From positions 36,704,001 through 36,768,000 of the forward strand of contig NC_134482.1 of assembly GCF_964194025.1 (NCBI RefSeq): a DNA stretch of 64,000 nucleotides, given 5' to 3'. Both the position numbers and the translations under genes were made by a program. The DNA is from Convolutriloba macropyga. Lineage: Eukaryota. The notes beneath the pieces were generated by a model. That model made no database searches. It had not been told where the DNA came from and worked only from the letters and a program-made list of their open reading frames with translations. Positions 189 to 57,704 of the stretch are shown here, in pieces (positions within the stretch are counted from its first letter, which is position 1; every line of letters begins with the position of its first letter).

Positions 189-4553
<4,365 letters not shown>

Positions 4554-11512: not shown

Positions 11513-12481
11513 AGAGATGAAATAAAATACTGATGAGGAAGTTTCATAGTCGACGGTTTTGAAATACCAGATTTTCAACTGTGAGAACTACTTTCCTGGA
11601 ACAAAAATCTGCAAAGTTTTCAAAATTAAGATCTTCCTACAGGATAACGATAACATATAACTGGTGTTACAAATGAAAACTATTCTGAAAAGAAGTAGGT
11701 GAAAACGCCCTCAGAACTAAAATTTTTCCAATTGGTCCCAATGCAAAACTTAGAAGATTTTGAACTTTTTTAGCTTAAGAATATTGATGACTGTATAATG
11801 CTACCAATTTTCGTCTAACAATCCCATATGAGGTCACTAGGATTTTGGAATATTCCAGATACACGGAACCATATTAAAATATTTTTTTAGCAAAGCACGG
11901 TTAGGAAAAAGTCAACAATACGCTTAGAAATAGAAGTTTAGGCTTCTGATCTTGCTTGCTCCAGGATTTTAATCCTCTTTAGAGTCCAAATTATTGGTTT
12001 GTAAATAAAATGCAGCCACCGCATTTGCAGTATGCCCTCCGCTTCCTTTTTAGTGATTTTTTTATCTTGTAAAGATTTAGATTCCGGACAAGAACGTTTA
12101 CGTAGGTTGTGAAAAAGTTTCGCACGTCTGAAAAATTTGGCACCTGATCTATCTAGTCTAGTGTTTGAAAGATACTTTTCCCTTCTATTATATTGCTTTG
12201 TAATTTCAGAGTTAGACTGTTAAGTCATCCTGCGGCGTATTGAGGAAAGCAAGTAGAAATAGAACATCGTGCATTTCAGTGCAGAGTGGTAATAGATCTA
12301 ATTTCATTAGTCGTTGTTTATTACGCAAAACTGATCAAAATATTCTCTTTGCGGCTTGTTTTTAATCTTTTCCAATTTTTGTCATCTTTCTATTGCTGGC
12401 ATTCCAAGAATGCGATGCAATGTTTACTATGGGTACCACATATCTTGTACACGCGCTTAATTTACTGTAAAGCGAGCAGTT

Positions 12482-13016
12482 CCCAGGCTGAGGTGCCAGA
12501 CGGAAGCAAGTATGTCCAGACCGTCCCAGACGGAAAGTACCTATGTCCAGACCGACCCAGACGGAATTTGCCTATGTCCAGACTTTCGTGCGTTCGCCAC
12601 ACTTTCGTGCGTTCATGTCCAGAATTTCGTGCGTTCACCAGACTTTCGTGCGTTTATGTCCAGACTTTCGTGCGTTCACCAGACTTTCGTGCGTTCATGT
12701 CCAGACTTTAGTGCATTCACCAGACTTTCATGCGTTCACCAGACTTTCGTGCGTTCATGTCCAGACTTTCGTGCGTTCACCCAACTTTCGTGCGTTTAAC
12801 CATTTTTCGTGCGTTCATGTCCAGATTTTCGAGCGTTCATCAGACTTTGTGCGTTCATGTCCAGACTTTCGTGCGTTCACCTGCAGTATTATTTGCTTTC
12901 ACCAGGTTGATATTTTTTGATGTCTCCAGACTATGTATTTTTGAACGCACGACGCCGCCTCGTGCGTTCATCTTCGGTTTGGACATACTTGCTTCCGTCT
13001 GGGAACTCATCCTGGG
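12482..13016 (+). mobile_element. Non-autonomous TIR transposon (CCC...GGG ends, 41-bp TIRs, TT 2-bp TSD; CMC/EnSpm-like) carrying a 19/22-bp minisatellite
   Basis: Left TIR cccaggctgaggtgccagacggaagcaagtatgtccagacc matches the reverse complement of 12976-13016 with 4 mismatches. Internal array of (tgt)ccagactttcgtgcgttca at about 12574-12880. Superfamily inferred from termini and TSD only. Confidence 0.88.
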
Positions 13017-36943: not shown

Positions 36944-38238
36944 ATGGCCAAACTGGTGGAGCATGTTTTGATCGGTGAGTTGTTTTTTTTAAGATTAATG
37001 CGATTAGCTCCGGGAATATTTTTCAGAGAATCACCTGAAATAACCTCAAGAATTTAACTTATTATTAAATTACTAAGTTATGAAAGCTTTTTGAAGGTTA
37101 AGGGGACAACCTGTAAATTTGAAGCGTTACAAATTTTGCAGAGAGCAAAAATAGGAAAGCTTTATTTTCACTTCAAAAACTTTTTTGTAAGTTGAATGTG
37201 ATGATTGAAGTAATTTTTGTTTTTTCATCCAACATCCTCCCCTTAGCTCACATAATTTAACTGCTATTCTCAACCAATTATAAACAATTTTCCGGTTAAA
37301 AAATCTCCGGTGATACCTCGGCCGGGGAAGCGATGAAACCTCGACCTAGTTTTCCGCTCCGAGTACTTTTGTAGACAAGATTATAATCTTTCTGTTCCTT
37401 AGTTTTCTAATTTTTTATTATATCTTTTTCTATTTGGGAAAAGAGGTTGCTTTGGGAATAAATATGCTTTTATTTATTTCCAGCGTCGGCGCTCATTTGC
37501 ATTTCGTGCGTGGTTGCCACATCGACTACTTTGAGTCCGAACGCGACAGATGCAAACGTGACAACCGCAGAACCCTTAGTCTTCGACGATGATATTCGGA
37601 AATCTACAAAAGCACTCGGATTTGAGGCGTACATGCTTTCGAAGGACACTTTGCGAGCATGCAACAAAATAAATTACGTCACAATGGAAATCGAAGAAGA
37701 ATCGGCCGATGGGAGCGATGAGGTGGGATCCGATAGCGAGGCCGCGAAGAAAGACTCAATGTTCTCTTACGGATTCATCGCGATTCAGGTCAGTGACCTT
37801 TATGACGTCATCAAAGAATGCAACGAGACCCTCTCCGATGGCGAAAATGACACCGACTCAATTTGGGACCTGACAGACCAGATTGTTGACATTATGGAAT
37901 CGGGTTCTGCTAACATCACCGATATCCTTTCGCTTTTCGAAATGGTAAAGAACGACACCGCTTTGTATGACTCGGCTATTTCCGAATGGTCGAAAAAGTT
38001 GACAAAGTTGGCAATGAATGTGATCACGGCGGCGCGGGACGCTTACAAAATGGTTCGGGACGATTCGGAAAGCGGAGCCGAGGCGGTTGACGACGCGAAA
38101 GACGCGATGACTGAGATCAAATACATGGCGGGTAAAATCAAACAACTTGCAAAAGAAATGGTCGATCACAAAGATGAGATCTACGAAGACATAATGGCTT
38201 ACCAAGAGACGGTTGAAAAAGAACTCGAGACTTACTGA
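36944..38238 (+). CDS. Orphan secreted acidic alpha-helical protein, 261 aa; exons 36944-36974 and 37484-38238
   Basis: aaaATGG start; donor G|GTGAGT; acceptor TTTCCAG|. The phase-1 join gives MAKLVEHVLIASALICISCVVATS (signal-peptide-like) in frame with ORF 37510..38238. GC content is raised relative to the flanks; six N-x-T sequons. Confidence 0.88.
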
Positions 38239-44596: not shown

Positions 44597-44773
44597 CTAC
44601 TCGATGTTGAGAACTTCGAATGCGTTTGGAGCCAGTCTTAGTTTCTGGAGAGGGTAATCGTGGAACTCGTAAGTGACTCCTCTGAATCTGGGAGTCTCTC
44701 CTCTCTCGTATCTGGAGTGATGACCACTGTAGAGCATCTTGCCATCCTCTTCACGCATTGACGTCACTTCACC
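44597..44773 (-). CDS. Tudor-TIR gene terminal exon 6 (missed by the ORF track)
   Basis: Acceptor TTTCTAG|; GEVTSMREEDGKMLYSGHHSRYERGETPRFRGVTYEFHDYPLQKLRLAPNAFEVLNIE*; aligns with the exon 3/4 repeat. Confidence 0.9.
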   Translation of the reverse strand, partial: GEVTSMREEDGKMLYSGHHSRYERGETPRFRGVTYEFHDYPLQKLRLAPNAFEVLNIE

Positions 44774-47700: not shown

Positions 47701-50700
47701 GTAAAGCAAAGATACAAAATTCAAAAAATGTATTTTTCTTTTTTGAAAATAGAACAAAATTGTCAACAGTGTGGTATGAACATCATATGTTGTAGCTACC
47801 CTGACAGACTTCTAAAACTGCCTGTTTAAATTGTTATCTGCGAAAAAATTGGTCTTTTAATAAATTTTTTAGTCTTCTTTCTGAAAAAGTCCAAAATTGA
47901 ACGTTTTTAGCGTTATGTAATGATTTTAATTTGCCTTGATGAGCTGTGATGACCTTGAGCAGTAATTTAGAGCAATATTTGGAGATTATATCAATCATTG
48001 AGGGGATTTGTTTTTTTTGGCTCACTTTCTATACTGATTTGTTTTTTTTTAATCCATGTTTAATTTTTCGACGTACTATTTTATGAGGAAAAATTTTCAA
48101 TCTACCGATAATTGGTCTTTTTCAAATCTGTAAAGAAAGTGACTAGTAATTGATTTGGCATGTGAATTGCGGGAAAGTAACAATAACGTTAATCCTCTTA
48201 CAAAAAATGAATCCAAAAAAACCTTTGAGGGCAAAAATTGTTAGCTTTCTAATTTTTTCCAAGACTAGTACGGTGAATGCCTAAATTCATTACACCAAAG
48301 AGCGTGTTTTCCAAATATTTCTCCAACGAAGCAAAATTACGAAAAAGCTGACGTCACTTGCCTCGAAGTATCGGAACCCAGAATAGTTCTCATCTGCAGA
48401 GTTCAACTTGTACTGTCCCTGAGGGAATAGAACAGTTGTCCCTACAGCTACATCCCCCTCACCCTCCTCTAGAAGTTCATCTTTAGCAGTCTCATTGTAC
48501 TTTACCACTCTGCCTGTTGTGTCTCCGTCGTCCCAGTCAACAGTAAAACACATCGTATCCTGTGCAAACATCATCATACCCGTGTCGAGGTTTTTGTGTA
48601 AATTTTTGTAAGAAATGCGATGAATGCGGTGAATTATTGTAAGAATTGCGGTGATTGCGGTGAATGCGGTGAAAACAAATATTTCATCGCATTTCACCGC
48701 ATTTCTTACGAAAATTCACCGCCAAACCTCGACCCGGGTATTTCCGTATGTGAGCCAGTTTAGTGTGATATTTTTTAAATTATTGTTTTTTTTCTGTTTG
48801 TACCCCCCAGGCCGCAGATGAAGGGGGCACAAAAAAGAAAAGAGGAGAACGTCGATGTTCATATTTTGAAATGCTTTGCATAAAAGTCTCATGCTATTTC
48901 TTACGAGGTAGGCACCAGACTTAAAATCCGATATCCTTGTTAATTTTGAGACAATATATCCATTTACGCTCAGACCCAATTATTTCAAAATCAAATCGCG
49001 CGAGATCTAACGAAAAATTTTAAAAAATGACAGGCAAATTATATGTCTCCATAATCTCTGACACGCCAAAAATTCGGCCTTATGCAATGGGATTTTGTGA
49101 GAAACAATTCCAGTTTTCTGAATTATTAGCCGACCAAGCGCTTAAACAATCATTAAGTGTTTATTGTATCTGAGAGGTATATGACTAGTTCTCATTGAAG
49201 TTTACTTAGGACAATTTATTTTCTCTAAGAATGAACTCAATTTTTCTAGAGAAACAGTTATCTGTTAAAAAAACTAATAGAAGTTAACAAAAAGAAACGA
49301 AAGTAAAGCTGATTTGCTATTTTGCTGTGATTCGAAATGTACAGTTTTCTTGGAAGGAAAACAAAAATTAACGCAGCTTAAAATAGAGAAGAAATATAGA
49401 GAGTGCATTGAAACGTTACCAGACAGGTGGGTATATGATGTGAAGGAACTGTAAGAGTTCTCCGAAGAGAAATAAAAAAATTTTTGTGACAAAAAAACAC
49501 AAAAAATTGAGTTCAGACAAGCAACCACTTGTGTATTAGGGTACAATACAGTCAGAAGGACTATTAATGTGCAAAACAGTTGTTCCTTAAATCTTTAAAA
49601 AATGTAAAAGTTCTAAGTTACTTAACAATTTTGAAAAGCTACGGTGATAAATAGCATTTTAGAGTCGAAGTACGAAATAATTCTCCTGTGCGTAAGTAAA
49701 AGATTGTCAGCAATATCTACAATAGAAGTAGTGTGGTCTTCTTCTCATCCTCGGGACTCAGACTTTAGACCAGATCACAAAAAATGAAAATTTCAATCAA
49801 TCGACTTATGGACAGACATGCTACACCAATATAGCTTCCAGGCCACTTGTAAAAAATTTAGGGTTTCACCATCCATCTAAATATGTCTTATAAGACCTGA
49901 ATATAACACTCAAACCCTGTATCGCACTTAACCTCTCATTTGTGATTCAAATATTCGGATCTATTCTGTCCCCCCCCCCCCCCAGCTTATAATTTTTTTA
50001 TGACCCCCAAGCGCATGTGCTATTTTCTTACATAGTAACCTGCTATATAACAACATTTAATTAATTTGTAACTGGGGGTCATAAAAAACACTGGGGGGGG
50101 GGGACAGAATAGATCTGCAAAAATTATCTCAGTTACTTTTTTGTCTGCCGGCGTTCATTGAGTTAAGGTCGGGACGCTGTTGACACTGATAAAATGAGGT
50201 TATGAACGATTTGTAAGTACCTTGTCATAGGCCACGATAGTTGAGAAAAAGAACTGTCCCCCCTGCCAGTGAGAAATAACATGGTCGCCAATCTTAGGAG
50301 CTCGGCTCTTCGTCTCAACCTGCTCCCGTCTCTCGAACACTTGCCCAGTAACGTTGTATCTCGAAATTCTGTTACAAATTTCTGTAATTTTACTTTGATA
50401 GTTGTATTCGTCATCTATTTCACGCATTTCAATTCGTTCGCTTCTTTCATCTTTTGCTTCGATTTGCCCCAGAACCATACCGACTTGTCGCTGCACCCAA
50501 TCCGCAGAACCCCGTTCGCCGACTATGATGGGTACCGTAGGAATCTTCATCGTTTTGACCGCGTGGTTAAACTCCATGTTACAATTCTCACTTTTACTAT
50601 ATTCCGAACTTATGAAGGTCAAAATGACTTGGGCTCCGGCTAAACCCTCAGCAATTTGTTCAAACATACTTGAATTCCGGTCACTTTGATTTGACGTTCC

Positions 50701-53700
50701 AAGCTGTTCAATGTCAAGCCATAATTTTTGACCTTGAAGTTGCCTCTCAACGTCCTTTTTGACCTTCCTCGGATCCGAATAGACACCACCCGCAACTTTA
50801 CGGATTTCATTAGCTTCGAATGAAAGGTAAGAATTCGTCCAGCAGTAACTTACAAAAACTGGGCACGGTTCCTTTTTGGGTTGTTGGGCAACGGAGTTTT
50901 GCTGATCTTCGTGAGGGCCACTTAGCGACTTTTTCATAGATCGTTCTAGCTCTTGCAGTTTTTGAGAGTACACAGTTTCATCTTTGAAATGGATGTAAAG
51001 CTCACCAGCGATTAATAACCCAATAACGGTTCTGGTCCAATCAAAACCATTCCCGACCACAATCGGAATTACAGGCACAGCTTTGGTCTTTTTAGCGAAC
51101 TGGAATTGTTGCTGACAACTTTCATCAGCGGCAAATTCGTTAGAAATAAATGCCAGAACAACTTTGCATTTTTGAATCATGATAGCGACCTCTTCTAATG
51201 ACGGGTTTCGGAACTTCAAGTTTGTTTTGATTCCCAAACTTTCCTCGACATCTGAAATAATTCGCATTGGGTTGATTTCTTTCCCTGAAGTGTTTTTGTT
51301 AGAATAGCACACGAACACGTCAAGGTCGAAGAAACGACTGGCGTTGGAACTGGTAGTTTCGGAGATGGAGCCCTCGAAGGATTCCAGAGCATTTGGCGAA
51401 ACTCGGAGACGCTCGATTGTGAGAGCTGAGAATGTCTGTTCGAATCCCCGATATGTTACCCATTTCCCGTCCTCCTCTCCAAATACGTGCTCACCATCGT
51501 AGAGGAATTTACCTATTAAAAAAATTAGAGCAGTATTTTCAGAAGCTTTTAAATCCAGATGTCACTTTAAATCCCTATTATGGTACCCATTTGCCGTCTA
51601 ACTCCCCAAATGCGTGTTCGCCAGCGGAGAGAAATTTACTTGTTTAAAGGACCAAGAGCGCCATTTTTAAAAATGTTATATGCCAGAAAAACAGAAAAAA
51701 AATAAAATACAAAATGATGCTAAAAGCTTGATTGATAAACAGGTTTTTATCTGTTTGGGACGGCTTCCCTATTTCCAAACTGAAACTGTCTTACAGAATT
51801 CGAGACGCAACCAGAAATTCTAAAAAAATATAATTTATTAGACTAAATGTGAATTTGTACGTCAGTTTCAAAAATTTGACTTAAACCAACTTGTTCTTTG
51901 AAAATCAGCTTTCCGTGTTTTCTGTTTAAAAACTTATTGTCTTGGATCAAATTTTAGATAAATTTTCTTCGCTCTCATACAGCTACTAACTACCATTTAG
52001 GTAACTAGGTAACAGCTGGCAATTGTTCAGGTAAAAAGTAGCGACATTGAAACTGCCCCCCCCCCCCCACCCCGTGCAGAGATCTTGAACAATAATAGCC
52101 GGTCTAAAACGGGAACTAGTGCCCCGATCGGGCAAATTAAAAGGTTTCATTTGGTGCTCATTTCTTTTTTGTATAACGCATTATTTCGATCATCCGGCCA
52201 GATTCAAAACAGCCACTGTAACTAATCAATTAAGCGATATTGTTATAACAATCTAATTATCAACACCTCTACAACAAATAGCAGTAATTCGTAAGAATAC
52301 AACAACACATAAATCGAACTAATTCGACGATGACTGGCATCTTATACCGCTTTTGTACGCTATCGATTTCTTTAAAAACCCACACAAAATAATTTGCAAA
52401 ATTTTTGCAAGTTACCGAGCTTCTCAATCACTGAAAAAAACGCAGGTAACTCAAATATTCTAAGTTGAGAGTTGAAAGGCGTTTCCTAAATTGCTCTAGA
52501 AAATTAAATTTACAGAAGGCAGCGGCTGTCAACATCTCGCTCTCGCGTTAGATCAAAATAATTGCAGCAACGGTTAGCAACGATTACAAGTGCCTTTTCC
52601 TCTGTCTACAGCAATAGCATTTTCGGCCCTAAGATTGAATAACAACCTTATCATAGTAATAATTTTCTGCGACGAACTCATTGTTAAGCCACTTTCAATC
52701 CCAGCAAAGAATTTGCTTTTGCGCACAAAGAACCAACCGTCATTGTGGCACAGAGCCTTTTTAATTTCAATTATACCAGTTCCATCATTACGCCCTTAGT
52801 AAAATTTAGTCAAGATGGTCGACAAATGGATAATGAAACTTTAATTTCCGGACCAATTAAGCGTTTTGGGGTCTTTCTGGTGCCTGGAATTGATCGCATG
52901 GGTCCAGTAACTCATTCATGTAATCCAGTAGTTCATTATTGGCATCAAGACTGTGGTTGTGAACAAAAAGGGGGCGGACAGCTACTGGGTCTCAAATTGT
53001 CAAATTTTTGCACAGGCTTTTCGCACAAAACTTTATATTTATATTGGCTTGCCAGGGGAACCGGAAAACTATGGGAAAGCTATGCAGCAACGAAGATTCC
53101 TCGGTGCTGGCTATCTCTTCATTCTCAAAAACCTTTTTATCTCAGATTCTAGCCCACATGCCCTTCTTTCTCTTCTCCAGTTACAATTACTTTTAATTTA
53201 CTAACCCTTCGATAGTTATGCTCACTTTGACTTGTTAGTTATTCACAACTGATTCTAACGCAATTTAATTAAATATGGTGATCTCTAACCATGGTTCTAC
53301 TAAGTTGACCGCTAGTTGTGTTTGTTCATTAACAATCTATATTGACCCATTCTGGTTAGTTCAATTTTACAGTACAGAATGACCGTTCTTCTGTAATTGC
53401 GAATCCCACCTTTTATTTGGTAGTACAAGACATAACAAATGCTAAAACACTCATTTTTGTTTCACATAGTGATATGACAACAGAAAATTAGTTTTCCAAA
53501 AAAAAAATAAAAAAAAAAGAAACAGTCCCAGGTTGAGGTCCCAGACAGAAGCAAGTATGTCCAGACCAAGATGAACGCACGACGGGGACGCGTGCGTTCA
53601 AAATTACATAGTCTGGAAACATCAAAAAACGCACGAAAGTCTGAACATGAACGCACGAAAGTCTGTCGAACGCACGAAAGTCTGGACATGAACGCACGAA

Positions 53701-56700
53701 AGGTCTGTCGAACGCACGAAAGTCTGGACATGAACGCACGAAAGGTCTGATGAACGCACGAAAGTCTGGACATGAACGCACGAAAGTCTGAACATAGTCC
53801 TAAAGAACGCAATGTTTGATAAACAAACATTAGGAACGTTCCTAAAGTTTGTTTATCAAACATTGCATTCTTTAGGTCGATGAACCCCCCCCCGCTCACT
53901 GTAAACTCTCAACGGGTGGTTTTCATGTCTTTTATCTCTTAATATCAGAGAAAAATTCTGTTCAATTTTCTAAATTTGTTCACAGTACCATCGGGCGACT
54001 TTGATATGTTTGTGATGCGGCCCATGTGCCATCGAGTGCCCCCCGATCTGTCCCCACTGGCGCCATAGGAACCCTGTTGGAACAGGACATTGCTACCCAC
54101 TCCAATCTCTGCCACTCCTGGTACCTTGTCCAAGGCAACGTCTGTCACCTGAAACAATTACCCACCTGAAATTTTTCTCTGTTGAGCGTGTTTTCATAAT
54201 TCAAAATTTTTTTTTCGAAATTTTTACAATTTTTCATGATTTTGCTTTGAACATCATGGGAATCAAAACCAAGAATGCTCGCTCTATTTTCAGAAAAAAA
54301 GTATCTATGGGACTTGTACTGAACATCATGAGTAGGAAGATATTCTTAGGATACACTGATACAGTACTGGGCCGACGATATACAATTGGAATACAATGTT
54401 TCAGCACTGATTTACTACGGCACTAGGGTCCGGGAAGCCCGTGAGAACAAACGACAGCAAGTTATTATACGCCAGGAAATACCTAAATAGTTATTGCCCA
54501 AATAGTTACTTAAAATGCCTTATCAGAACTGGCATAAATTAGTAAGCGAATTTAAACCTTATAGCCGTTCCCGGGCCGAGGTATCACCATAAATCTACCT
54601 CACAATTACCAGGGTAAAGGGTGCATTAGTCAATACAGTCCTTATTATGAGTGAAAAAGTGTACTTTTGAAAAATTGCACTGGGTTTACACTTTTGTCAG
54701 TCAGTTTTCGTCGATTCGATTTATTCAAGGTGGAGATTGTGAGTGGTATCTTTAGAAATCTTGTCAAGCGTAGAATATCAAATTAATAATTTTTTCTTTA
54801 AAATTTCTCTTTCTCTAATGAATTACAAACGTTTGAAATGATATGAACATTAGGCTCACTTATGCTGCTTTGTTAAAGTTTTTCAAAATTTTCGCCAATT
54901 TTTTGACCAATTTTAATGAGAAAGTGCTAAAGTTTTAATGATATCCTCGTTTATTATTCGTTTAAAGACAAAAAAGAAATGCTTAACTGTTTGAACCAAC
55001 ACTTTTGGCTAAGATTTTGCCTAAAGTTTGGACAATTTAACAATATTTTCTCATTTTTCATGAAAAATGGCACCAAATATGATTCCTTAGTCCATTGAGA
55101 CCAAATTTAGCAACAATGCAGTACAAAACATTTCTGGAACGACCTTTGTTTAATAACACGAGGAATAATTGTACCTTCGGTTTCGAAGAAAATGCTCTGG
55201 ATCTAACATTTTGGCTGCGTTTCCCTGATTTATATCGATATTTAGCAAAACTGCATTAATTCTTTTTTGATATATTAAGAATCTTGTTAGCTAAAATCTA
55301 TACCGCAATAATTGGGAACAATGTTGTTTTTTGGCAGCCGCGCAGTGATAGCAAAGTCAGTTTTGGTCTCATCGTTGAGTTGCTCGACAAAAAGGATTTT
55401 GAAAAAGGTTTTTGAAAAGAAAAAGGTTTTTGTCTAACCTATTTACTATATTGTTTTTTAAGTTGCCTCTTTGTGGTGCGCCACTTTTCATTGTTTTCTG
55501 TCACCTTTAAGCGTAGTCTAAGTAAAGAAATTGTTAACGTCCTTTTTAAGTGAATTTGTAAAGTTGTAAATTTGTCTGCACTGCTGTTTTATCAATTATG
55601 GGATGATTTTTTTGGATTTGATCCTAAGAGTTTCATAATTTTTTGCCATTTTCGGATTTTTCCAAATTTTTGTATCTTTTTGCTGGGTTCTCCAGTCGTC
55701 AGATTCATAACAAATGAAACACCACACTAATGGAGTTGTAACAAGGTTTAATGGTTAAATTTAATGTTTATTTTTTGATCGGTTTTCTCACAAAATTTAA
55801 CTGACTTTTTGATCTTTGCCAGTCCGGCTTCTTTTTTAAGTTATATCTTGATCACGATAAAAATTTAGGTCTCGAGGGTTTCCTATGTAGGTAAAAATGA
55901 AACAAATTATTAATTTCAGTTGATGGATAATTCAAAGAAATTATTTGTTCTCAAAAGTATAAACGTTTTTTTCATCATTACCTTTTTTGTTTTTTTTTGT
56001 AATTGTCTACACGTTAATTTTGTTCAACAAAGACAGGTTTCATATTTTTGATGCTGAAATAAAATTCAATTTGTTTAGTTTTTATTTTATTTTCTGCTTT
56101 TGTGACTTTGTTATTAAGTTTTTTGTTAAAAAATAGATGAACAATGAGGTTTGGTCCTATTTAATACTTTTTCTTATCATTTGATTTTGTTGTTAGTGTT
56201 ATATCCAGGCTTATCTCCTTTAATGGCAAGTATCATCAGCCATTTAAGAGCCATTATTCATTTTGCTTAGTGGTTTGAGCTGAAAGCGATTTTTAACTTG
56301 AGACATCAATTATTTTCGAATAATGTAAGTTTTTTGAAAATTTCCTATCTCTTCCTCAATGGCAGACAATTAAGTCAAAAATGTGTTAGAGCTGTGTCGC
56401 AACATTATGTGCAGTCGAACATTACCGATGCCTCTTGTTTGTTAGAAATCTGTTTATGATACTATCTTGCAAGCGAATGCGTACGGGTTCTAAGATATTT
56501 GCAAGATTCTTTCGATTATTTCGACACGTTGGCACGAATGGAGCAAGCGTTTTGATTAATTTTGCAATCTTTCTTATTCATTTTCTAAGTCTTTTTTATT
56601 CATTTTGCAAAAATTTTTATTCATTTTTTGAGCTTTTTGATTGATCCTGCAAGTTATCTTAGAAGATGAATCGAAATGGTAGAAAAATTCTTGCAGGTGA

Positions 56701-57704
56701 ATTGAAAACCTCCGAGAATCTTCCATTCTTGCAACTTGATACTAGCATTCAATTGACCGACCATTTGGGTGAAAACCGTAAGTAAAACATGATCAGGTCA
56801 TCTTCGTGGATTCAAGAGGAAAGTCTGTGATCAAAATTATGTTGTCTGGATCTCCGTTCGATCGCACGAAAGTCTGTGCAATGGCCTTAAATGAGCCTGA
56901 ACAGAGGTCATTATTGCCTCGGTGGTAAGGTCACCTCGAATGATGTAATCATGGCACTTTAAGAGACTCTGACCTTAACTACCCGACCATCCGGATCATT
57001 GTCGTCCCAAGTGATGTGGAACTCCTGCTTATCCTTGTCCAGAGAGTCCACCCTGGCAGGGAAGTACTGGTGCTGGAAGTACTTGGCATATATCTTGTCT
57101 CCCACTTTTGGGAAGTTCGACTGGACCATTCGCTTCTGCATTTCCTGTCTGAGAATCTTCCATTTTTGAAGGTCAACTCCTGGACAAAATGAAAGAAAAT
57201 GGACTCGTTGCTAATTTTTTTAGCGTTATTTATGTTTTGAAATTACGCATCATCCTAACTTTTATTTTTATTGTCAATTGTGAATAAAAAACCATTCAAA
57301 TGAATGGTGTTCGCTGAATTTTTTGGTACGTGCTGTATCACCAATTCAACGATTGTCCAATAAAACGATTTAATTTTAATATAAAACGCAGAAAACGAAA
57401 ACAGAACTATCTCATCATTGATCGTGGAACCAACGTTTAAAGTTTGAACACTGAAACGAAATACGAAATTTAAAGTTAAGATATCTTAATCTCTTGTATA
57501 TTCAATCTCAAACCAGAACTTAAATTCACGAATATTAAACAAGTTTCTCTCGATGTTATGAATCTATGGGTTTAATAGACATATCTATTTTTCAAAATCA
57601 ATTTAGATAGTTAGTTATAACTAGGTTTATAACAAGTTATACTTACCAGCTACAGTTAGTTGGTTTTCGACTTCTTCGACTAATCTCTTAATTTCTGGGT
57701 CCAT
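44597..57704 (-). CDS. Tandem-Tudor-like / TIR / TIR / tandem-Tudor-like protein, 696 aa; exons 57704-57647, 57179-56974, 54148-53989, 51512-50221, 48559-48362, 44773-44597
   Basis: Exon lengths 58+206+160+1292+198+177 = 2091 nt, with phases 1,0,1,0,0 giving one open frame ending in TAG. Two TIR folds (DVFVCYS; PVFVSYCW..WLDIEQ..SEYSKSENCNMEF). The N- and C-terminal halves are internally homologous (PK(V/I)GD..WDD.D..GRVVK..VG..VLF.QG.Y..DGK.LY.G.H..RG..LR+.PNA.E). Confidence 0.9.
46158..47126. mobile_element. Degenerate TIR element with subrepeats of about 30 bp (gttatcttgcaagaatctggcagaaaaatg-like), in intron 5
   Basis: Left end gtcgagactggaatgttatcttgcag versus right end ctacaagataactatcctttctcgac; subrepeat clusters at 46170-46350 and 46830-47080. 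Confidence 0.6.
48362..48559 (-). CDS. Tudor-TIR gene exon 5, ending at a GC splice donor
   Basis: Acceptor GCACAG|; DTMCFTVDWDDGDTTGRVVK...GTTVLFPQGQY...FRYFE; donor GAG|GCAAGT. Confidence 0.88.
48579..48738. mobile_element. 160-bp foldback MITE, CCCG...CGGG, flanked by TA
   Basis: ta|cccgtgtcgaggttt ... aaacctcgacccggg|ta, with the internal inverted pair gtaagaaatgcg / cgcatttcttac and tgcggtga subrepeats. Confidence 0.85.
49956..50117. mobile_element. 162-bp MITE with poly-C/poly-G TIRs and an imperfect 8-bp TSD
   Basis: cggatctattctgt(C)nag..ttttttatgaccccca versus tgggggtcataaaaaa..ct(G)nacagaatagatctg; flanks caaatatt / caaaaatt. Confidence 0.82.
50221..51512 (-). CDS. Tudor-TIR gene exon 4 (end of Tudor 2, both TIR domains, start of Tudor 3)
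   Basis: Acceptor TTTTAATAG|; extends ORF 50200..51318 upstream by 64 codons (KFLYDGEH...LRVSPNALE...DLD); donor AAG|GTACTT. Confidence 0.94.
53527..53795 (-). mobile_element. Truncated second copy of the 12482-13016 minisatellite TIR element, in intron 3
   Basis: TIR cccaggttgaggtcccagacagaagcaagtatgtccagacc, internal hairpin and tgaacgcacgaaagtctgga units; the other TIR is missing. Confidence 0.88.
53799..53876. repeat. 78-bp spacerless palindrome
   Basis: cctaaagaacgcaatgtttgataaacaaacattaggaac|gttcctaaagtttgtttatcaaacattgcattctttagg; 2 mismatches in 39-bp arms. Confidence 0.92.
53989..54148 (-). CDS. Tudor-TIR gene exon 3 (Tudor-like domain 2, first part)
   Basis: Acceptor TTTCAG|; VTDVALDKVPGVAEIGVGSNVLFQQGSY..TRWHMGRITNISKSPD; donor ATG|GTACTG. 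Confidence 0.9.
56974..57179 (-). CDS. Tudor-TIR gene exon 2 (Tudor-like domain 1)
   Basis: Acceptor TTTTGTCCAG|; PKVGDKIYAKYFQHQYFPARVDSLDKDKQEFHITWDDNDPDGRVVK; donor AAG|GTCAGA. Confidence 0.9.
57647..57704 (-). CDS. Tudor-TIR gene exon 1
   Basis: aataATGG; MDPEIKRLVEEVENQLTVA; donor CTG|GTAAGT; phase matches exon 2. Confidence 0.72.

What the first reader, a model, noticed from the sequence alone, without database searches (positions are those of the whole stretch)
50356..51321. Asymmetric TIR pair: TIR2 keeps the catalytic Glu, TIR1 has Gln
Seen: TIR2 has SEYSKSENCNMEF (Glu codon GAG at 50574-50572) and an intact WLDIEQ beta-B/BB-loop motif. The aligned TIR1 segment reads NEFAADESCQQQF (CAA at 51108-51106) and lacks the W.D motif. 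Knowledge: the Glu in S..C..E of helix alpha-C is the catalytic residue of TIR NADases (SARM1 E642), and replacing it abolishes activity; TIR active sites form between adjacent TIRs. Inference: this is a built-in pseudo-enzyme/enzyme pair, where TIR1 acts as scaffold, allosteric partner or auto-inhibitor.
Basis: partly seen in the sequence, partly recalled or inferred. Interest (0 to 1): 0.78.

Follow-up and report, generated by a model that had tools for sequence, protein, structure and literature searches.

The report
Acoel twin-TIR protein, one dead half
One exon of an acoel flatworm gene encodes two duplicated TIR domains: the second keeps every residue of a TIR NAD-cleaving pocket, while the first has lost them (Glu to Gln, two Asp to Asn) yet stays conserved. 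This points to a built-in dead-partner/enzyme pair, but the split is specific to acoels and no activity has been shown.

Summary
On the minus strand, GAG 50574-50572 is Glu455 of TIR2 and CAA 51108-51106 is Gln277 of TIR1. The gene is Convolutriloba macropyga LOC142354527 (696 aa): tandem Tudor, TIR1, TIR2, tandem Tudor.

Both TIRs pass Pfam TIR_2 on their own and are internal duplicates (hhalign E 2e-44).

- **Family-wide asymmetry.** In 92 twin-TIR relatives, TIR2 has Glu in 91 and about 20 near-invariant positions. TIR1 has one such position, and its Glu site varies (E, Q, L, I, M, V, A).
- **TIR2 pocket.** Its invariant Asp408, Ser449 and Glu455 align with the mutationally defined Cat1 NADase residues D33, S68 and E74.
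- **Acoel TIR1.** It carries Gln, Asn and Asn at the three acidic positions and lacks the W.D motif, yet it is as conserved as TIR2 among acoels.
- **Lineage limits.** 30 of 40 full-length orthologues (cnidarians, ctenophore, tunicates) have Glu in both TIRs. Every acoel copy is Q/E, including all four loci in this genome.
- **No activity shown.** Two isolated TIR2-type domains from relatives showed no activity in a published E. coli screen.

TIR1 as a dead partner is likely. TIR2 as an enzyme is plausible but unproven.

The parts
50221..51512 (-). Exon 4 of LOC142354527. It encodes residues 143-572: the end of the N-terminal tandem Tudor module, TIR1, TIR2 and the start of the C-terminal Tudor module.
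   Evidence: Acceptor AG at 51514-51513 and donor GT at 50220-50219. Exact match to XP_075262964.1.
50917..51339 (-). TIR1 (residues 200-340), the Glu-less copy.
   Evidence: Pfam TIR_2 29.9 bits against a cutoff of 28. In the AF2 model it aligns to Hydra TRR-2 TIR at Z 16.3, MyD88 at 15.1 and SARM1 at 14.4.
50437..50883 (-). TIR2 (residues 352-500), which has the complete pocket motifs.
   Evidence: Pfam TIR_2 33.0 bits. The profile hits Cat1 TIR at E 7e-6. About 20 positions are at least 90% conserved in 92 homologues.
51106..51108 (-). CAA = Gln277 of TIR1, at the alpha-C catalytic-Glu position.
50572..50574 (-). GAG = Glu455 of TIR2. It is Glu in 91 of 92 homologues.
   Evidence: It aligns with Cat1 E74 and with RPS4 ..VRELE...
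50713..50721 (-). W406-L-D408 of TIR2 (beta-B). W and D are invariant in 92 sequences, and D408 aligns with Cat1 D33.
51220..51228 (-). K237-T-N239 of TIR1, the counterpart of W-L-D (Asp replaced by Asn).
51265..51273 (-). N222-P-M224 of TIR1, the counterpart of TIR2's invariant D388-P-R390. Acoel TIR1 also lacks the roughly 20-residue loop insert that precedes this motif in other orthologues.
50986..51021 (-). G306-F317 of TIR1 (GLLIAGELYIHF), the most conserved block of TIR1. TIR2 has no counterpart motif. It is a candidate surface for the partner role.
   Evidence: G306, L308 and G311 are invariant, and A310, Y314, I315 and F317 are at least 90% conserved in 40 orthologues. The partner role itself is inferred.
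56971..57704 (-). Coding exons 1 (57704-57645) and 2 (57177-56971): N-terminal helices and the first Tudor barrel.
   Evidence: Pfam Tudor_3 and PTM_DIR17_Tudor hits are below threshold. Foldseek matches 53BP1 and UHRF1 tandem Tudor.
53987..54145 (-). Coding exon 3: second barrel of the N-terminal Tudor module.
48362..48559 (-). Coding exon 5: C-terminal Tudor module.
44597..44773 (-). Coding exon 6, including the stop codon.

Best explanation
The stretch is the twin-TIR core of a 696-aa acoel protein (tandem Tudor, TIR1, TIR2, tandem Tudor). This family is conserved from choanoflagellates to tunicates. Its twin-TIR module also ends large LRR-Roc-COR proteins; those identified are from a scallop, an abalone and an annelid.

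TIR1 and TIR2 arose by an old internal duplication and have divided their roles. TIR2 keeps a complete TIR-enzyme pocket (F.SYCW.NS, DPR, W.D, S..Y..S.NC..E). It is the only domain that could process NAD+ or a related nucleotide.

TIR1 never had the W.D strand or the pocket Ser. In acoels it has also replaced its remaining pocket acids with amides (Asp to Asn twice, Glu to Gln). It is therefore catalytically dead, but it is kept under selection. Its best-conserved part is the C-terminal beta-D to alpha-E block. I infer that this block docks on or positions TIR2, or builds the oligomer in which TIR2's site is completed.

Shown: the residues, the duplication, the asymmetric conservation, and the lineage distribution.
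Inferred: that TIR2 is catalytic, and that TIR1 is its structural or regulatory partner.
For: - **Residues and motifs:**
- **Internal duplication:** hhalign probability 100, E 2e-44.
- **Asymmetric constraint:** in 92 twin-TIR pairs, TIR2 has about 20 positions at least 90% conserved (F361, S363, Y364, W366, N368, S369, D388, P389, R390, W406, D408, S443, Y446, S449, C452, E455, A459, P466, G473, W480). TIR1 has only W300.
- **Match to a known active site:** TIR2 D408, S449 and E455 align with Cat1 D33, S68 and E74. Those residues line the Cat1 NADase site and abolish function when changed to Ala. K121 and Y122 of the neighbouring TIR complete that site (PMC12162218).
- **Degenerate acoel TIR1:** D388N, D408N, E455Q, S449D, W406K, R390M/I and W366N/D equivalents, plus loss of the loop insert.
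- **E-to-Q is the standard catalytic-dead substitution**.
- **Q/E is fixed in acoels:** it is present in all four loci of this genome, in Symsagittifera, and in six further acoel-like clusters of 53-75% identity.
- **TIR1 is maintained:** 63-65% identity among acoels, like TIR2.
- **Independent structure-based calls:** the published Table S3 gives the same asymmetry in relatives (A0A7I8VYT1_2 Leu; R7TDS1 Met/Glu; B3S091 Gln/Glu).
Against: - 30 of 40 full-length orthologues keep Glu in both TIRs, so the dead/live split is not a family design.
- TIR1 of those species may still be active or may use the Glu for something else.
- Two isolated TIR2-type domains of the same twin-TIR family (Dimorphilus A0A7I8VYT1 = P0054, and a Rotaria protein) are listed with no activity in an E. 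coli lysate assay for cADPR isomers and NAD+ depletion.
- Only 12 of 61 Glu-bearing animal TIRs were active there. Dictyostelium TirB and TirD keep the Glu but do not cleave NAD+.
- No structural alignment of TIR2 to a solved TIR could be obtained, because TIR1 took every TIR row.
- No contact between TIR1 and TIR2 was shown.
- No RNA evidence for expression was found.
Confidence: 0.5

Rival explanations
1. Neither TIR is an enzyme. The twin TIR is a signalling or assembly scaffold like MyD88 or MAL. TIR2's invariant residues (including the Glu) serve folding, partner binding or nucleotide binding without turnover. The Gln in TIR1 is just one more adaptor-type residue.
For: Isolated TIR2-type domains from two family members showed no activity. 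Most Glu-bearing animal TIRs tested were inactive. TirB and TirD keep the Glu without NADase activity. MyD88 itself has Gln at this column in the ungapped HMM alignment (..CDFQTKF..). The closest structural matches of TIR1 are the Hydra TRR-2, MyD88 and IL-1RAcP TIRs.
Against: A scaffold does not explain near-invariance of exactly the residues that line the Cat1 NADase pocket (Asp, Ser, Glu, AA-loop Ser/Asn) across 92 sequences from choanoflagellates to molluscs, while the sister domain varies freely at the same columns. The negative assays used isolated single domains in bacteria, without TIR1 or an activator, and looked for only a few products.
Confidence: 0.27
2. The Q/E split is neutral drift with no partner function. 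TIR1's pocket was already incomplete in the family ancestor (no W.D, Asp in place of the pocket Ser), so its Glu was dispensable and was lost by chance in acoels and elsewhere. On this reading TIR1 is kept only as a folding or spacer unit or for an unrelated interaction.
For: At least four independent E/non-E changes at the TIR1 site on the tree. All TIR1s lack W.D and the Ser. The LRR-Roc-COR twin-TIR branch has Leu, Ile, Met, Val or Ala there.
Against: Gln and its flanking CQQQFQ motif are invariant over acoel copies that are only 53-75% identical. All three acids became their isosteric amides rather than random residues. TIR1's C-terminal block is nearly invariant across the family. Together these point to a maintained, shape-preserving role.
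Confidence: 0.15
3. TIR1 is still catalytic in acoels, using another acid (for example D271 or E272, just before the alpha-C helix) in place of the lost Glu.
For: D271 sits at the column of TIR2's pocket Ser449, and E272 follows it.
Against: E-to-Q at this column abolished activity in every TIR tested in the cited screen. TIR1 also lacks the beta-B Asp and the DPR Asp. No coordinates were available to check the pocket geometry.
Confidence: 0.04

Closest known systems
Cat1 (CRISPR-associated TIR 1; PDB 9mud), a filament-forming TIR NADase
   Same: It is the best sequence match of both TIR profiles among solved structures (E 7e-6 for TIR2). TIR2's W.D, S and E align with Cat1 W31/D33, S68 and E74. 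The Cat1 site is completed by residues of a second TIR.
   Different: Cat1 is a bacterial CARF-TIR with a single TIR per chain, activated by cA4. Here two TIRs sit in one chain between Tudor modules, and no activity is known.
SARM1 TIR (E642 NADase)
   Same: Same fold (TIR1 against SARM1 TIR: Z 14.0-14.4, rmsd 2.4-2.5, 125 residues). By eye, TIR2's F.SY..NS and W/F-x-D-x-E-x-L motifs resemble the SARM1 sequence printed in Table S4. E642Q is the dead control there.
   Different: Sequence identity is about 10%. SARM1 has one TIR behind ARM-SAM domains and an octameric ring. There was no significant sequence hit to SARM1 in the PDB profile searches.
RPS4/RRS1 TIR heterodimer of plants (PDB 4c6t)
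   Same: As a concept, it is a Glu-bearing TIR paired with a partner TIR that regulates it (own knowledge). RPS4's ..CVRELE.. aligns with the family's Glu column, and there is a structural match at Z 13.4.
   Different: The plant pair sits on two separate NLR proteins (in trans). Here the pair is in cis and arose by internal duplication. No interaction was shown here.
MyD88 TIR (non-enzymatic adaptor)
   Same: It has Gln at the catalytic-Glu column in an ungapped alignment to both profiles. It is the second-best structural match of TIR1 (Z 15.1).
   Different: The profile E-values are only about 0.04. MyD88 has a death domain and signals by filament assembly.
LRR-Roc-COR twin-TIR proteins (Pecten XP_033763307, Haliotis XP_067667740, Dimorphilus A0A7I8VYT1)
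   Same: They carry the same twin-TIR module (E 1e-25 to 1e-40) with the same polarity: TIR1 has a non-Glu residue and TIR2 has Glu.
   Different: The sensor and regulator domains are different (ROCO instead of Tudor). TIR1 has hydrophobic residues rather than Gln. One TIR2 of this group was tested alone and is listed as inactive.

Membership tests
TIR domain (Pfam TIR_2, PF13676) | The profile score is above the curated gathering threshold for each domain on its own. | tested here: met
   TIR1 29.9 bits and TIR2 33.0 bits against a cutoff of 28.
TIR domain (Pfam TIR_2, PF13676) | Flavodoxin-like TIR fold that matches solved TIR structures. | tested here: met
   TIR1: Z 16.3 (rmsd 2.1, 119 aa) to Hydra TRR-2, with dozens of TIRs at Z 13-15. 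TIR2: pLDDT about 90-96 with alternating strands and helices, but no TIR row was reported for it because TIR1 filled the lists. For TIR2 this feature therefore rests on Pfam and on the duplication.
Catalytic TIR (NAD+-processing: SARM1, plant TIR, Cat1, ThsB type) | Glu on helix alpha-C pointing into the pocket. | tested here: met
   Met for TIR2 only: Glu455, which is Glu in 91 of 92 homologues and aligns with Cat1 E74 and RPS4. Not met for TIR1: Gln277.
Catalytic TIR (NAD+-processing: SARM1, plant TIR, Cat1, ThsB type) | The other pocket-lining residues: beta-B Asp, the Ser before alpha-C, and the AA-loop Ser/Asn. | tested here: met
   TIR2: D408, S449, and S363/N368/S369 are invariant, and D408 and S449 align with Cat1 D33 and S68. 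TIR1 of acoels has N239, D271 and C210/T216 at these columns, so the feature is not met for TIR1. This is by sequence alignment only.
Catalytic TIR (NAD+-processing: SARM1, plant TIR, Cat1, ThsB type) | Measured, Glu-dependent cleavage or cyclisation of NAD+. | not testable with these tools
   The only experimental data are on relatives. Isolated TIR2-type domains of Dimorphilus A0A7I8VYT1 and Rotaria A0A818LFL5 have a blank 'Active' entry in Table S4 of 10.64898/2026.04.20.719644.
Enzyme/pseudo-enzyme TIR pair (RPS4/RRS1-like, here in cis) | One partner lacks the catalytic residues but is maintained by selection. | tested here: met
   Acoel TIR1 has Gln, Asn and Asn at the acid positions and is 63-65% identical among acoels, like TIR2. 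Q/E is fixed in all acoel copies.
Enzyme/pseudo-enzyme TIR pair (RPS4/RRS1-like, here in cis) | The split is a conserved property of the orthologous family. | tested here: not met
   30 of 40 full-length orthologues are E/E. At least four independent changes occurred at the TIR1 site.
Enzyme/pseudo-enzyme TIR pair (RPS4/RRS1-like, here in cis) | Direct contact between the two TIRs that changes the activity of the live one. | not testable with these tools
   Model coordinates and contacts are not returned. The pair model's pTM of 0.61 does not settle the orientation.

The most novel reading that the evidence does not exclude
The twin TIR is a self-contained two-TIR active site. TIR1's near-invariant GLLIAGELYIHF surface plays the role of the 'second TIR' (like K121/Y122 of the neighbouring Cat1 subunit) for TIR2's BB-loop pocket. 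One chain would then carry a complete, normally latent NAD+-processing site that is switched on by what the two flanking 53BP1/UHRF1-like tandem Tudor modules bind. That would be a previously undescribed ligand-gated TIR enzyme, conserved from choanoflagellates to tunicates, with acoels showing the end state of the division of labour.
Probability: 0.15. Interest if true: 0.8.

Novelty: new variant of a known kind. Interest (0 to 1): 0.5.

Why it matters
TIR domains are now known to be enzymes in bacteria, plants and some animals. Which animal TIRs are catalytic, and how their two-subunit active sites are assembled and held in check, remains open.

This family offers a natural experiment. It is a duplicated TIR pair in one chain. 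One copy keeps every pocket residue over roughly a billion years. The other has repeatedly shed them, ending in acoels with the same E-to-Q change that experimenters use as a dead control.

If TIR2 is active only together with TIR1, that would explain why isolated TIR2-type domains scored negative in a large screen. It would also define a cis enzyme/pseudo-enzyme TIR module, shared by Tudor-flanked and ROCO-type proteins. If it is not active, the family shows that a fully conserved 'catalytic' pocket can serve another purpose, which would caution against reading activity from the Glu alone.

Tried and rejected
- **Complex prediction, TIR2 with TIR1 as partner.** No verdict (score 0.00, controls not run, the alignments were not used). 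This is evidence neither for nor against binding.
- **Structural neighbours of TIR2.** Three fold searches on the pair model listed TIR chains only against TIR1 (residues 8-145). The only rows on TIR2 (163-310) were nucleoside 2'-deoxyribosyltransferases (Z 10.5 and 9.2), too weak and too few to interpret.
- **Model coordinates.** They are not exposed, so neither the pocket geometry of TIR1 (an alternative acid?) nor the TIR1-TIR2 interface could be inspected.
- **Expression.** The four runs that hold the exon are genomic contigs that span the introns. No RNA run was found, so expression is not shown.
- **Literature searches for a Tudor-TIR architecture.** None found a description. The library lacks most subscription journals, so this is not proof of absence.
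- **Stylophora orthologue (A0A2B4R5J2).** It was not found in the stored, truncated parts of the Hurieva tables.
- **Assembly error or pseudogene.** I considered that the Gln might be either and rejected both. The exon's reading frame is open, with no stops, in all four loci of this genome, the residue is identical in all of them, and it is the same in another acoel genus.

Full report
**What is there**

The window is animal DNA (about 35% G+C, with introns). The finding lies in one long exon on the minus strand, 51512-50221. It has an AG acceptor at 51514-51513 and a GT donor at 50220-19.

An exact-sequence look-up identifies the product as residues 143-572 of XP_075262964.1, 'uncharacterized protein LOC142354527' of the acoel Convolutriloba macropyga, 696 aa. 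Mapping that protein back gives six coding exons between 57704 and 44597.

The architecture is:
- short N-terminal helices;
- a two-barrel Tudor module;
- TIR1 (200-340);
- a disordered linker of about 12 residues;
- TIR2 (352-500);
- a helical linker;
- a second two-barrel Tudor module.

The AF2 model has mean pLDDT 84.5. Its best PDB matches for the flanks are the 53BP1 and UHRF1 tandem Tudor domains.

**Checking the observation**

GAG at 50574-50572 is Glu455 in ..NCNMEF.. and CAA at 51108-51106 is Gln277 in ..CQQQF... W-L-D of TIR2 is at 50721-50713, and TIR1 has K-T-N at the aligned place.

Each TIR passes Pfam TIR_2 alone. The two are clear internal duplicates (hhalign probability 100, E 2e-44, 26% identity), so aligning Gln277 with Glu455 is sound.

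Profile searches of solved structures put this column on Cat1 E74 and on the Glu of RPS4 ..CVRELE... Cat1 E74 lines the NADase site, and E74A abolishes function (PMC12162218).

Contigs from four genomic runs show both codons unchanged. The only variant in the exon is a synonymous G>A at 50518.

**Relatives**

An exhaustive HMMER search found 560 homologues, 44 of them below E 1e-30.

Full-length proteins with the same Tudor-TIR-TIR-Tudor layout occur in:
- acoels (Convolutriloba, Symsagittifera);
- anthozoans (Nematostella, Actinia, Stylophora, Desmophyllum);
- a ctenophore (Bolinopsis);
- tunicates (Ciona, Clavelina, Styela);
- the choanoflagellate Salpingoeca infusionum.

The twin-TIR module alone also ends proteins of 2000-3300 aa. 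The two that I scanned, from Pecten and Haliotis, are LRR-Roc-COR proteins.

**The Glu column across relatives**

In 40 full-length orthologues the TIR1/TIR2 states are E/E 30, Q/E 6, L/E 2, V/V 1 and Q/A 1 (the last is a gappy sequence). The Q/E rows include the three acoel proteins and the choanoflagellate.

In 70 homologues that cover both domains, TIR2 is Glu in 69. TIR1 is L 18, E 14, I 10, Q 9, M 5, A 5, V 3 and others.

On a maximum-likelihood tree of 92 pairs, the acoel clade is fully supported. At least four E/non-E changes are needed at the TIR1 site.

Every acoel-type sequence seen has CQQQFQ in TIR1 and Glu in TIR2. This covers six further clusters at 53-75% identity and all four twin-TIR loci of this genome. 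There is no E/E copy in C. macropyga.

The split is therefore old and fixed in acoels.

**The asymmetry is much larger than one residue**

Over 92 pairs, TIR2 has about 20 positions at least 90% conserved: F361, S363, Y364, W366, N368, S369, D388-P-R390, W406, D408, S443, Y446, S449, C452, E455, A459, P466, G473 and W480. TIR1 has one, W300.

D408, S449 and E455 align with Cat1 D33, S68 and E74. All three were shown by mutagenesis to be needed for Cat1 function in cells.

In a joint alignment of all TIR1 and TIR2 domains, no TIR1 group conserves W.D or the Ser; TIR1 has Asp or Asn at the Ser column. Acoel TIR1 additionally has:
- N222 for D388;
- N239 for D408;
- Q277 for E455;
- M/I for R390;
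- K for W406;
- a deletion of the roughly 20-residue loop that other orthologues keep before DPR.

All three conserved acids have become their amides. That is the pattern of a shape-preserving dead copy rather than of decay.

TIR1 is not decaying. It is 63-65% identical among acoels, like TIR2. Its C-terminal block G306-F317 (GLLIAGELYIHF) is nearly invariant in the whole family, and TIR2 has no such motif.

The conservation is thus complementary: the pocket half in TIR2, and the beta-D to alpha-E half in TIR1.

**What the literature adds**

A 2026 preprint (Hurieva et al., 10.64898/2026.04.20.719644) uses E-to-Q as the dead control for SARM1, BdTIR and TLR4, and finds that activity always depends on this Glu.

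It also shows that the Glu is not sufficient: 12 of 61 Glu-bearing animal TIRs were active.

Its Table S4 includes two TIR2-type domains of this very family. One is Dimorphilus A0A7I8VYT1, residues 1746-1890 with Glu1833, which is identical to my P0054. The other is from a 2825-aa Rotaria protein. Both were expressed alone in E. coli and both have an empty 'Active' field.

Its Table S3 gives structure-based calls of the catalytic position that reproduce the asymmetry in relatives:
- Leu for the other TIR of the Dimorphilus protein;
- Met/Glu in Capitella R7TDS1;
- Gln/Glu in Trichoplax B3S091.

A second preprint shows that Dictyostelium TirB and TirD keep the Glu without cleaving NAD+.

I found no paper describing a Tudor-TIR architecture in the searchable library.

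**Interpretation**

Three things are well supported:
- TIR1 of this protein cannot be a conventional TIR enzyme.
- TIR1 is nevertheless maintained by selection.
- TIR2 is the domain on which selection has preserved an enzyme-type pocket.

That TIR2 actually turns over NAD+ is an inference. I put it at about one half, lowered by the two negative single-domain assays and raised by the pocket-specific invariance.

That TIR1 acts as TIR2's partner is a further inference. The partner role could be supplying the second-subunit surface of a composite site as in Cat1, building the oligomer, or holding TIR2 off. It rests only on the complementary conservation pattern and the known two-TIR nature of such sites. 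I could not test contacts.

The main rival is that the whole module is a non-enzymatic assembly scaffold. TIR1's Gln matches MyD88's Gln at the same column, and its nearest structures are receptor and adaptor TIRs.

**Verdict**

This is a new variant of a known theme (a catalytic TIR paired with a non-catalytic TIR, known in trans for plant RPS4/RRS1), here in cis within an uncharacterised, ancient protein family. Interest is moderate (0.5). The family-wide polarity of the twin TIR is the more valuable result. The acoel Gln is its clearest natural 'dead-mutant' example, not a unique design.

Noticed in passing
window 51566-51638 (minus strand), about 55-125 bases upstream of the exon-4 acceptor: A decayed partial copy of the first 70 or so bases of exon 4. 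It reads ..KFLSAGEHAFGELDGKWVP**GFK.. against the exon's KFLYDGEHVFGEEDGKWVTYRGFE, and it contains two stop codons. This is a small tandem duplication of the exon start within the intron.
   Followed up: partly
window 53424-53821, and similar ORF-like repeats at 12286-12920: A tandem or dispersed repeat that gives long pseudo-ORFs (..FRAFMSRLSCV..). Summed contig depth is 10,000 to 300,000 against about 25 for the flanks in four genomic runs, so this is a very high-copy element inside an intron of the gene. Other high-copy stretches lie at 48449-48846 and 49842-50239, next to exons 5 and 4.
   Followed up: partly
window 3318-3680 (minus strand): An open frame with the kinase subdomain motifs HRDLKPSN and DFGLAR followed by ..T.P.. 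I read it by eye as an exon of a JNK/p38-like MAP kinase gene.
   Followed up: no
window 37510-38238 (plus strand): A 242-aa open frame rich in Asp, Glu and Ser, with no obvious domain. It was not examined.
   Followed up: no
G000 C6:13934754-13935680; C505:84549-85376; C4:57979001-57979828 (loci L002-L004): Three more intact twin-TIR exons in the same genome (81%, 67% and 67% identity), all Q/E. C505 and C4 have identical motifs and may be haplotigs or a recent duplicate. Two short TIR2-like fragments on C1 (L005, L006) look like remnants; L006 contains stop codons.
   Followed up: partly
window 50518: G>A in contigs of two of the four genomic runs. It is a synonymous change in the Gly473 codon of TIR2, probably an allele.
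   Followed up: yes
Pair model m360559817b09, residues 163-310 (TIR2): In the search of PDB representatives, the only chains that aligned better to TIR2 than to TIR1 were nucleoside 2'-deoxyribosyltransferases (6evs_B at Z 10.5, 1s2d_A at Z 9.2). This enzyme fold is often compared with catalytic TIRs (own knowledge). The match is too weak to use.
   Followed up: no
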